Assembly (NCBI RefSeq): GCF_032191835.1
Contig: NC_083229.1
Coordinates: 111,910,001-111,974,000 of the forward strand
DNA from: Heteronotia binoei
Taxonomy: Eukaryota
Direction: 5' to 3'
DNA length: 64,000 bases
The position numbers and the translations under genes are program-made. Position 1 is the first letter of the stretch; each line of letters opens with the position of its first letter. Positions 39,010 through 41,192 of the stretch are shown piece by piece. The notes beneath the pieces were generated by a model. It saw only the letters and a program-made list of their open reading frames with translations, was not told the origin of the DNA and did no database searches.

Positions 39010-39144
39010 CTTGAGTCATTATTAGCTGATGTCTTTAAAGGGAAAGGATTTCAGAAAATAAGCGAAGCGTTAAAAGAAAAGGACGTTTATCCTCAGAAGT
39101 TCAGCAAACAACTATTAAACCAACTGGACAAAGTTCTGAAAAAG
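39010..39144 (+). CDS. SYCP2L: SYCP2L exon 3 (135 nt): LESLLADVFKGKGFQKI...LDKVLKK; GC donor
   Basis: ttctag|CTT...AAG|gcaagt; matches the SYCP2/SYCP2L N-terminal motif LxSLIxDAFxxKGFQKI. Confidence 0.9.
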
Positions 39145-39236
39145 GCAAGTAATCTGACAGTTCATTAATTTAAGCCACCAAATTACTCATTTTAGGCAGT
39201 AACACATGTATGGATTGCTTCCCCCCACACCAATAG

Positions 39237-39356
39237 GAACTGGACAAAAATGAGTTCTCAAATGTTTCTTTGTTGCTGAAATGCATCCAACTGTACTGTA
39301 GAAGTGATCCATACGAAGGTGTAAACCTGCTGCTTCAGCAAGGATTGATACCAAAG
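39237..39356 (+). CDS. SYCP2L: SYCP2L exon 4 (120 nt): [18 protein letters not shown]...QQGLIPK; AT donor
   Basis: caatag|GAA...CCA AAG|ataagt; strong match to recalled human [18 protein letters not shown]. Confidence 0.88.
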
Positions 39357-39677
39357 ATAAGTAACTTTGTGCTTAGATATAATGTGTCTGATTTGCTGCA
39401 ATCAGTCTTCATAGCAGAACAAGTTTGTTTTTAAGGATATAGAGACCAAAATGTTTACCTGTTAACTTCTTTGTCTGTTCAGTACTCTTAATTTTCAGGT
39501 GAAGATTGTGTATTGAGGAGTACTTTTTTGCTTGCAAGCATTTAATTTTACGGTGATACTTTGTAAGCCGAGAGTGCAGGTTTCATTTTAAAATATGATT
39601 TATTAAACGATTATTTTAGAGTCTAGCAATAAAGTGCTTATAGAAACACAACTGTTTATGGAGGCATACAAAATGGA

Positions 39678-39945
39678 GACCAGTTTGGTGCAGTGGTTAA
39701 GAGCGGTGGACTGGAATCTGGAGAACCGGGTTTGATTCCCCACTCCTCTACATGCAACCAGCTGTGTGACCTTGGGTCAGTCATAGGTCTGTCAGAGCTG
39801 TTCTCTCAAGAGCAGTTCACTGAGAGCGCTCTCAGCCCCACATGCCTCTCAGGGTGTCTGTTGTGGGGAAAGGAAGAGACGGAGATTGTAAGCCACTCTG
39901 AGGCTTCAAGTGAAAGGCAGGATATAAATCCAATCTCTTCTCCTT
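39678..39945 (+). mobile_element. Squam3-like SINE in SYCP2L intron 4
   Basis: Homologous to 10876-11150. Confidence 0.72.
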
Positions 39946-40296
39946 CTCAGTACAAGGACATCACAGCTTATCACCTGCACTTGCACATAAGCAACATATT
40001 TTAAAATCTTCATCAGGCATTGCTGGCCATATTGTTGCAAAGTATTCATGCTTCCATATCACCCCCCAAAGTGTAGAAATCCTTTAAGAATATTAATGAC
40101 ATTTCTTAAAACATTGTTGATTCAGTTCAGTGAAGTTAGTGTTGTCTCTTTAAGAATCCGTGCAGGTTTTTCTCCCCTCCCAAGAGAACTGACTCATTTT
40201 CCTGTAGCTATCCCAACAGAAAATAGTTGGTATAAATAAAGCTTAACATGTAGCCAATCGTCTCTTGAAAGTTCCTATAGAAAGCATAATGTTTTC

Positions 40297-40478
40297 CAGG
40301 GCTCATTTTGTAGCAGGAGCTCCTTTGCATATTAGGCCACATACCCCTGATGTATTCAATCCTCCAAGAGCTTTGAGTAGGCCGTGTAATAAGAGCCCTG
40401 TAAGCTCTTGGAGGATTGGCTGCATCAGGGGTATGTGGCCTAATATGCAAAGGAGCTCCTGCTACAAAATGAGCCCTG
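40297..40478. mobile_element. Fold-back MITE, family A, in SYCP2L intron 4
   Basis: CAGGGCTCATTTTGTAGC...GCTACAAAATGAGCCCTG; near-perfect palindrome. Confidence 0.82.
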
Positions 40479-41087
40479 AATTGTTTTCACATAATGCAGT
40501 GCCTGGGATTCAGGAAGTGTCAAAGACTGTTCTCTCAGACTGACTTTGCTATATCTAAATGCTAGGCTATATGCAAGGTTACAGTTTGGTATGCATATAC
40601 CTGGATAATCTTCCTTTTTCATCCTGTTGCAATCCTCACCGGTGGCGTTGGAGTCCAAGGGGGAGAGAATAAGCTTTCATTAATTTCTTTCAATCTCTGG
40701 AAGTTGGACAAGTATTGCTTTAGCTTGTCTGTTCAAGATAAGGTGCATCTTAACTGGAGCAGGAAAGAAAGATACAGCATTGAGTCTCCTGGGAACCAGC
40801 TTTTTGGGGTCAGTTTCAAGGAGGATCTGCCACAACTCCTCCTCTGCTTGAAGAATTTTGGTTAAGTACTGTTCCAGCCACTTACTGGGCCAACCAGAGG
40901 AGGCGCACCATGGAACCAGGAGGTGTAGTTGGGTGTGGAGGATGAGGGTAAAAGGAAGAAAAATTCTTCTTTCATTCTTGGTTTCTGCAAATGGCCAGTC
41001 TCTGCTTGTTAACTTAGTTACTTACTTTTATACTTCTGCTGCGTTAAATATTCATCTGATTTTTGCTTATGTGTCTTTTGTTTCTAC

Positions 41088-41192
41088 ATGGTCACTTGGT
41101 TTGAAAGAACTAGAGAATTTCTGAGCCTGATAGAACCAAAAGAAAGTAAATTCTTAGCAACACTTGTTGAAGACTTTTTCGACACAGCGCTG
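41088..41192 (+). CDS. SYCP2L: SYCP2L exon 5 (105 nt): MVTWFERTREFL...VEDFFDTAL; AC acceptor
   Basis: ttttgtttctac|ATG GTC ACT TGG...CTG|gtaagc; matches recalled human LVSWFERT...IEDFFDTAL. Confidence 0.88.

What the first reader, a model, noticed from the sequence alone, without database searches (positions are those of the whole stretch)
39357..41087. AT-AC intron with a major-spliceosome (U2-like) signature in SYCP2L
Seen: homology (…GLIPK | MVTWFERT…) joins exactly if the 1731-nt intron starts ATAAGTAAC and ends TTTTGTTTCTAC. There is no AG within about 70 nt of exon 5. The donor is not ATATCCTT and no TCCTTAAC branch box is present; instead there is a U2-like CTGAT about 28 nt upstream plus a pyrimidine tract. 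The GT-AG alternative (39361 with AG at 41016-41017) hits TGA at 41122-41124. Established: U2-dependent AT-AC introns are a very small class, exemplified by one intron of voltage-gated sodium channel genes. I cannot check whether this intron is already catalogued in orthologs.
Basis: partly seen in the sequence, partly recalled or inferred. Interest (0 to 1): 0.85.

Follow-up and report, generated by a model that had tools for sequence, protein, structure and literature searches.

The report
Known major-type AT-AC intron in SYCP2L
The intron between exons 4 and 5 of this reptile's SYCP2L gene really starts with AT and ends with AC while otherwise looking like an ordinary major-spliceosome intron, but the same intron is conserved from rays to mammals and is already listed as a U2-type AT-AC intron in human SYCP2L and SYCP2, so it is real but not new.

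Summary
Intron 39357-41087 (1731 nt, phase 0) starts aag|ATAAGTAACT and ends TTTGTTTCTAC|atg, and the nearest upstream AG is 70 nt away. The flanking exons map to positions 48-87 and 88-122 of Pfam SYCP2_ARLD, so homology fixes the junction to the residue. No GT/GC-AG pair reproduces it.

It is not an assembly error. DNA contigs of three relatives show no listed change at either intron end. The homologous intron is AT-AC with an AT[A/G]AGT donor and a TAC acceptor in gecko, python, penguin, elephant, frog and electric ray SYCP2L. The paralog SYCP2 in this same genome has it too.

The donor matches the U2 consensus at every position except +1. It matches the U12 donor at only 3 of 8 positions. 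No U12 branch box lies near the 3' end, while a CTGAT branch candidate and an 80% pyrimidine tract do.

De Wolf et al. 2021 (PMC8280824) list human SYCP2L intron 4 and SYCP2 intron 5 as U2-type AT-AC. They also show SYCP2 intron 5 is insensitive to depletion of a minor-spliceosome factor. No RNA evidence could be obtained for this species. Interest is low.

The parts
39010..39144 (+). SYCP2L exon 3 (LESLLADVFKGKGFQ...LDKVLKK)
   Evidence: Pfam SYCP2_ARLD positions 2-47; translation; tblastn with gecko SYCP2L
39145..39236 (+). Intron 3, 92 nt, a GC-AG intron (aag|GCAAGT ... CCAATAG|g)
   Evidence: The GC donor is also present in penguin, elephant and frog; it is GT in gecko, python and ray
39237..39356 (+). 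SYCP2L exon 4 (ELDKNEF...QQGLIPK), 120 nt
   Evidence: Pfam PF18581 positions 48-87, E 5.6e-13; 98% identical to gecko SYCP2L residues 52-91
39354..39364 (+). 5' splice site aag|ATAAGTAA: U1/U6-type consensus apart from A at +1, with G at +5
   Evidence: AAG|AT[A/G]AGT is kept in all 8 genes compared
39357..41087 (+). Intron 4, 1731 nt, phase 0, AT-AC termini, U2-type signature
39680..39935 (+). tRNA-derived SINE copy inserted inside the intron (passenger, not part of the splice signals)
   Evidence: huge depth and loose ends in four runs; at least 5197 first-look candidates in the own genome; the 39 other copies scored are 83-86% identical
41056..41060 (+). Candidate U2 branch site CTGAT (A at 41059, 28 nt from the 3' end); CTTAT at 41066-41070 is a second candidate
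   Evidence: the CTGAT...TTTTTGCTTAT block is kept in gecko and nearly kept in python. Inferred, not mapped.
41061..41085 (+). Polypyrimidine tract (80% C/T)
41086..41087 (+). 3' terminal AC (TAC|atg)
   Evidence: TAC or CAC is kept in all orthologs and in SYCP2
41088..41192 (+). SYCP2L exon 5 (MVTWFERTREFLSLIEPKESKFLATLVEDFFDTAL), 105 nt, followed by GTAAGC
   Evidence: Pfam PF18581 positions 88-122, E 1.2e-9; aligns from M103 of mouse SYCP2 5iwz_A

Best explanation
This is intron 4 of the squamate ortholog of SYCP2L. It is a genuine AT-AC intron of the rare major-spliceosome (U2-type, 'AT-AC II') kind.

Shown here: the termini, the exact junction, the U2-like and non-U12-like signals, and conservation of these features from cartilaginous fish to mammals and in the paralog SYCP2.

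Inferred from established knowledge and from published human data:
- U1 snRNA pairs with AAG|AUAAGUA at -2, -1 and +2 to +7 despite the A at +1.
- U2 pairs with a yUnAy branch site about 28 nt (or about 18 nt) upstream of the 3' end.
- U2AF binds the pyrimidine tract.
- At catalysis, the A(+1)/C(last) non-Watson-Crick pair replaces the usual G/G pair.

Changing either end alone would break that pairing. The state is therefore 'trapped' and has persisted since before the SYCP2/SYCP2L duplication.
For: Junction fixed by contiguous Pfam positions 87|88 and by M103 of mouse SYCP2. The gene is SYCP2L: the best hits are named SYCP2L in gecko, python, turtles, birds, frogs, elephant and elephant shark. 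The donor matches GTAAGT at +2 to +6 in 5 of 5 positions, and the U12 donor at only 3 of 8. The best U12 branch-box match is 6 of 9. The pyrimidine tract is 80% C/T. The same AT-AC is found in Sphaerodactylus, Liasis, Pygoscelis, Elephas, Spea and Narcine SYCP2L, with intron lengths from 273 to 9854 nt and little or no similarity beyond the splice signals outside the squamates. It is also found in the own-genome SYCP2 on contig C2. DNA contigs of three relatives cross both ends with no listed change at 39357-39366 or 41085-41087. 87 of 119 public SYCP2L protein models contain the ...K|xVxWFE junction. Literature: human SYCP2L and SYCP2 introns are listed as AT_AC / U2; SYCP2 intron 5 was tested by RT-PCR as a major AT-AC intron; none of the major AT-AC introns responded to depletion of the minor-spliceosome factor CENATAC (PMC8280824). 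The primers confirm it is the homologous intron.
Against: There is no transcript evidence from this species. No RNA run was listed, and the laid contigs were DNA-like and gave no exon 4-exon 5 joint among the rows shown. Spliceosome dependence was not tested here. In human it rests on sequence classification and on insensitivity to CENATAC depletion, not on U2 or U12 knock-down of this particular intron. The branch point is only predicted.
Confidence: 0.88

Rival explanations
1. It is a U12-type (minor-spliceosome) AT-AC intron with degenerate signals.
For: The termini are AT-AC, which are mostly U12-type in vertebrates. Weak U12-branch-like words exist: TTGCTTATG, 6 of 9, 18 nt from the 3' end here, and TTTTTTAAC, 7 of 9, 8 nt from the end in penguin.
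Against: The donor ATAAGT (ATGAGT in penguin) matches ATATCCTT at only 3-4 of 8 positions in all 7 genes scored, and positions +4 to +6, needed for U11/U6atac pairing, are all wrong. The exon ends in AAG and the intron has G at +5, both U1-type features. The human ortholog and paralog are classified U2, and the major AT-AC introns were unaffected by CENATAC depletion.
Confidence: 0.04
2. The AT and AC are assembly or sequencing errors in an ordinary GT-AG intron.
For: None beyond the prior that non-canonical termini are often errors.
Against: Two independent errors would be needed. Contigs from three other organisms (X2-X4) show no listed difference at either end. Six independently assembled orthologs and the paralog in the same genome have the same AT-AC.
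Confidence: 0.01
3. The real transcript uses a nearby canonical GT/GC-AG pair, or retains or skips sequence, and the AT-AC junction is only apparent.
For: 44 in-frame GT/GC-AG combinations with open frames exist within about 100 nt, for example GT 39361 with AG 41115. About a quarter of public gene models use such alternatives or read into the intron.
Against: Every alternative either deletes the conserved MVxWFER block or adds residues with no counterpart in the Pfam profile or in orthologs. Most models, among them NCBI RefSeq (XP_) ones, use K|MVxWFE. The models that deviate are truncated, split or partial, as in the ray, where the gene is split into two models exactly at this intron.
Confidence: 0.05

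Closest known systems
Human SYCP2L intron 4 (NM_001040274.2, chr6:10894205-10898010), listed as AT_AC / U2 in Datasets EV1/EV3 of de Wolf et al. 2021 (PMC8280824)
   Same: Orthologous gene and the same ordinal intron (part 8 in position-sorted exon/intron numbering, which is intron 4). Same AT-AC termini and same U2 classification. The elephant ortholog fetched here shows aag|ATAAGTGT...TGTGTAC|atg at the same junction.
   Different: Different species. The intron body is unrelated (here 1731 nt with a squamate SINE). The human sequence itself was not inspected here, so orthology of the listed intron rests on its ordinal position and on the elephant locus.
Human SYCP2 intron 5, used as a 'major (U2-type) AT-AC' RT-PCR control (de Wolf et al. 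2021, Fig 5E)
   Same: Paralogous intron at the identical protein position. The published exon 5 and exon 6 primers translate to VLGQAG and KDIIQSQ, which lie in the exons homologous to exons 4 and 5 here. The SYCP2 copy in this genome reads aag|ATAAGTATAT...TCTTTAC|atg.
   Different: Different gene. The flanking exons are only 34-37% identical in protein.
AT-AC II introns of voltage-gated sodium channel genes SCN4A/SCN5A (Wu and Krainer 1997; Sheth et al. 2006, PMC1557818)
   Same: AT-AC termini with a U2-type donor that has G at +5, and preservation across paralogs and from fish to human.
   Different: Unrelated gene family. For the SCN introns, dependence on the major snRNAs was shown experimentally; this has not been done for SYCP2L.
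U12-type AT-AC introns
   Same: Terminal dinucleotides only.
   Different: They need an ATATCCTT donor and a TCCTTAAC branch box 10-20 nt from the 3' end. Both are absent here and in all orthologs.

Membership tests
U2-type AT-AC (AT-AC II) intron | Intron begins AT and ends AC at a junction fixed independently of splice rules | tested here: met
   Pfam positions 87|88 are contiguous. In the shift table only AT-AC is a known pair.
U2-type AT-AC (AT-AC II) intron | 5' splice site fits the U2-type consensus (M)AG|GTRAGT except for A at +1, including G at +5 | tested here: met
   aag|ATAAGT here; 5 of 5 at +2 to +6 in 6 of the 7 genes scored, 4 of 5 in penguin (ATGAGT); the ray also reads aag|ATAAGT.
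U2-type AT-AC (AT-AC II) intron | No U12-type donor (RTATCCTT) and no U12 branch box (TCCTTRAY) 8-20 nt from the 3' end | tested here: met
   Donor 3 of 8; best branch-box match 6 of 9. Consensus matching only; intronIC PWM/SVM scoring was not available.
U2-type AT-AC (AT-AC II) intron | yUnAy branch candidate followed by a pyrimidine tract | tested here: met
   CTGAT at -28, CTTAT at -18, 80% pyrimidines. The branch point was not mapped.
U2-type AT-AC (AT-AC II) intron | Termini conserved in orthologs | tested here: met
   Gecko, python, penguin, elephant, frog, ray and the paralog SYCP2; three further relatives by DNA contigs.
U2-type AT-AC (AT-AC II) intron | The spliced junction is observed in RNA of this organism | tested here: inconclusive
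   No RNA run was listed. The laid runs were DNA-like contigs of relatives, and the joint table was swamped by the SINE.
U2-type AT-AC (AT-AC II) intron | Splicing requires U1/U2/U4/U6 and not U11/U12/U4atac/U6atac | not testable with these tools
   Only indirect support: the human SYCP2 and SYCP2L introns are classified U2 and did not respond to CENATAC depletion or mutation.
U12-type AT-AC intron | ATATCCTT donor and TCCTTAAC branch box near the 3' end | tested here: not met
SYCP2L gene (SYCP2 family, SYCP2_ARLD domain) | Exons encode the PF18581 domain, and the best full-length relatives are named SYCP2L, distinct from the SYCP2 paralog | tested here: met
   A separate SYCP2 locus lies on contig C2.

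The most novel reading that the evidence does not exclude
The SYCP2/SYCP2L intron may be a 'trapped' descendant of a U12-type AT-AC intron, following the rare U12-to-U2 pathway that Lin et al. 2010 proposed for the sodium-channel genes. It would have been fixed before the duplication that gave the two paralogs and kept for more than 400 million years. The ATTCTTAAC word 36 nt upstream of the SYCP2 acceptor in this genome could be a relic branch box. After the sodium-channel genes, this would be a second gene family in which the conversion can be traced, if invertebrate or jawless-vertebrate SYCP2 still carries an ATATCC donor at this site.
Probability: 0.12. Interest if true: 0.45.

Novelty: already known. 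Interest (0 to 1): 0.18.

Why it matters
The practical value is for annotation. This intron defeats predictors that accept only GT/GC-AG. 32 of 119 public SYCP2L models misplace the junction or read into the intron, and the ray gene is split into two models exactly here. Biologically, it is a clean and deeply conserved example of a major-spliceosome AT-AC intron shared by two old paralogs. That makes it useful as a control or as a case for studying why such introns persist. Its existence and class are already on record for human, so a specialist would not be surprised.

Tried and rejected
- RNA evidence: the look-up of sequencing runs on the whole region listed nothing. With exon 4 alone it listed 7 runs of other organisms, none on record as RNA.
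- The single read-laying run included the intronic SINE. The SINE flooded the joint and piece tables, so an exon 4-exon 5 joint, if any contig had one, would not be among the rows shown. The cap prevents a repeat without the SINE.
- The PDB search with exon 4 gave no hit.
- The look-up of encoding contigs returned no DNA for the túngara frog, caecilian and lungfish because the genes are too long. It found nothing for non-longest isoforms.
- SYCP2 orthologs outside this genome and invertebrate SYCP2 could not be reached. The searches return only the best 120 hits (all SYCP2L), and spliced proteins cannot be passed by reference.
- The U12-type reading, assembly error and canonical alternative junctions were considered and rejected (see rivals).
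- The search of earlier findings returned nothing.
- No structure prediction or complex prediction was relevant.

Full report
**Observation.**
- Exon 4 (39237-39356) ends ...GGA TTG ATA CCA AAG.
- The next bases are ATAAGTAACTTT.
- The intron (39357-41087, 1731 nt, phase 0) ends TTTTGTTTCTAC.
- Exon 5 (41088-41192) reads ATG GTC ACT TGG TTT GAA... and is followed by a normal GTAAGC donor.
- The nearest upstream AG is at 41016-41017, 70 nt from the exon.
- CTGAT sits at 41056-41060, and the last 25 intronic bases before the AC are 80% pyrimidine.

**Is the junction real?** It does not rest on splice rules.
- Pfam SYCP2_ARLD (PF18581) aligns the exon 4 peptide to profile positions 48-87 (E 5.6e-13) and the exon 5 peptide to 88-122 (E 1.2e-9). 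There is no gap and no overlap.
- The exon 5 peptide aligns from its first residue to M103 of the mouse SYCP2 crystal construct 5iwz.
- Within about 100 nt of either end, 44 GT/GC-AG combinations keep an open frame. Every one either removes the conserved MVTWFER block or adds residues with no counterpart.
- Sliding the cut gives only AT-AC, or the product-neutral TA-CA and AA-AT (exon 5 begins with AT). In penguin, exon 5 begins with CTG and only AT-AC fits.

**Gene identity and host.**
- A whole-library search with the 40-residue exon 4 peptide returned 26 hits. Those looked up by name are SYCP2L of a gecko (98% identity), a python, penguins, a lungfish, elephants, a caecilian, frogs and the elephant shark.
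- A profile search returned 590 relatives, and the 120 listed are overwhelmingly named SYCP2L or SYC2L.
- The window (contig C7 of a 2.63 Gb genome) holds exons covering residues of about 30 to 400 of SYCP2L.
- The intron carries a tRNA-derived SINE at 39680-39935 with thousands of copies in the genome. Together with the protein affinities, this points to a squamate reptile.

**Not an error, and conserved.**
- Contigs from three other organisms (runs X2-X4, about 90% identical) cross both intron ends. No difference is listed at 39357-39366 or 41085-41087, although neighbouring intron bases do differ. The caveat is that only the best-supported rows are printed.
- The SYCP2L locus was fetched from six independently assembled genomes and the junction read directly:

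| Species | Donor | Acceptor | Intron length (nt) |
|---|---|---|---|
| Sphaerodactylus (gecko) | aag\|ATAAGTAACT | TTTTTAC\|atg | 2609 |
| Liasis (python) | aag\|ATAAGTAACC | TTTTTAC\|atg | 1538 |
| Pygoscelis (penguin) | aag\|ATGAGTATAA | CTTTTAC\|ctg | 1213 |
| Elephas (elephant) | aag\|ATAAGTGTCA | TGTGTAC\|atg | 1199 |
| Spea (frog) | aag\|ATAAGTGTAC | CCATTAC\|atg | 273 |
| Narcine (electric ray) | aag\|ATAAGTATAT | TGTTCCAC\|atg | 9854 |

- The paralog SYCP2 in the same genome (contig C2) reads aag|ATAAGTATAT...ATCTTTAC|atg at the same protein position. Its exons align to mouse SYCP2 residues 64-101 and 103-137.
- The flanking exons of the two paralogs are only 34-37% identical in protein. 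The AT-AC state is therefore most simply older than the SYCP2/SYCP2L split and is present across jawed vertebrates.
- Outside the squamates, beyond AAG|AT[A/G]AGT and a pyrimidine tract ending in AC, the introns share little or no sequence. This is the pattern expected if selection acts on the splice signals only.

**Which spliceosome?**
- The donor matches the U2-type consensus at -2, -1 and +2 to +6, and here also at +7. It has the G at +5 that Lin et al. 2010 stress for the sodium-channel AT-AC U2-type introns.
- It matches the U12 donor ATATCCTT at only 3-4 of 8 positions in every gene scored. No U12 branch box reaches more than 6-7 of 9, and none at a consistent position.
- This is the criterion Sheth et al. 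2006 used to define AT-AC II introns: a U2 donor matrix with G changed to A at +1.
- The mechanism is inferred, not shown here: U1, U2 and U2AF recognise the site, and the A(+1)/C(last) non-Watson-Crick pair replaces G/G at catalysis. It rests on the published yeast and human suppression experiments cited by Sheth et al..

**What is already known.**
- De Wolf et al. 2021 (EMBO J, PMC8280824) list, in their intron-retention datasets, SYCP2L NM_001040274.2 chr6:10894205-10898010 as AT_AC, U2, and SYCP2 NM_014258.3 chr20:59919598-59920358 as AT_AC, U2.
- The part numbers, 8 on the plus strand and 80 on the minus strand, correspond to intron 4 of SYCP2L and intron 5 of SYCP2.
- Their Figure 5E uses 'major (U2-type) AT-AC introns in SYCP2 (intron 5) and TAF2 (intron 1)' as RT-PCR controls.
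- The text states that none of the 85 major AT-AC or related introns responded to CENATAC depletion.
- In the patient dataset the SYCP2L intron has adjusted P 0.92.
- Their SYCP2 exon 5 and exon 6 primers translate to VLGQAG and KDIIQSQ. These lie in the exons homologous to exons 4 and 5 here, so it is the same intron position.
- Sheth et al. 2006 had already counted 15 human AT-AC II introns, ten of them in sodium-channel genes and one in TAF2. The others are not named in the text available to me.

**What was not shown.** I could obtain no RNA evidence for this species. Support for the junction in transcripts is indirect. 87 of the 119 public SYCP2L protein models in which the motif could be located contain ...K|xVxWFE, among them many NCBI RefSeq (XP_) models. 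Dependence on the major snRNAs has not been tested for this intron in any species, as far as I could find.

**Verdict.** The finding is a correct re-discovery of a known and conserved U2-type AT-AC intron.
- direct DNA evidence that the state reaches from ray to mammal and is shared by both paralogs;
- a measure of how often it breaks gene models: 32 of 119 models misplace it, and the ray gene is split in two at this intron.

Interest is low.

Noticed in passing
window 39145-39236: The intron just upstream (intron 3, 92 nt) is a GC-AG intron (aag|GCAAGT...CCAATAG|g). The GC donor and the short length (80-92 nt) are kept in penguin, elephant and frog. Gecko, python and ray have GT. So two non-GT donors lie 212 nt apart (39145 and 39357) in this gene.
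   Followed up: partly
window 39680-39935: A 256-nt tRNA-derived SINE lies inside the intron. The own genome gave at least 5197 first-look candidates, and the 39 other copies scored are 83-86% identical. The four public runs laid show enormous depth here. The head (GAGACCAGTTTGGTGCAGTGGTTAAGAGCGG...GGTTTGATTCCCCACTCC) looks like the squamate 'Sauria'-type SINE (from memory, not tested).
   Followed up: partly
window 41088-41186 (run X2, record 14): In one relative's run, a second contig (1189 nt, depth 21.6, against 23.5 for the genomic contig) starts matching exactly at the first base of exon 5, at its own position 121. Exon 4 is exactly 120 nt long. It could be a spliced copy (retrocopy or cDNA), a second haplotype or subgenome, or a coincidence.
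   Followed up: no
L013 10001-14418 and 24267 onward (Narcine bancroftii): The public annotation splits the ray SYCP2L into a 112-aa model that reads into the AT-AC intron (K|ISIFNQLSY) and a separate 879-aa model starting in exon 5. Many bird 'SYC2L, partial' models instead use ...GLV|LTDSFNFY LVSWFE, which comes from an upstream AG. Both are systematic annotation errors caused by this intron.
   Followed up: partly
L004 about 1470-1480 (own-genome SYCP2, 36 nt upstream of its AC): ATTCTTAAC matches the U12 branch-box consensus TTCCTTAAC at 7 of 9 positions but lies too far from the 3' end. It may be chance, or a relic of a U12-type ancestor.
   Followed up: no
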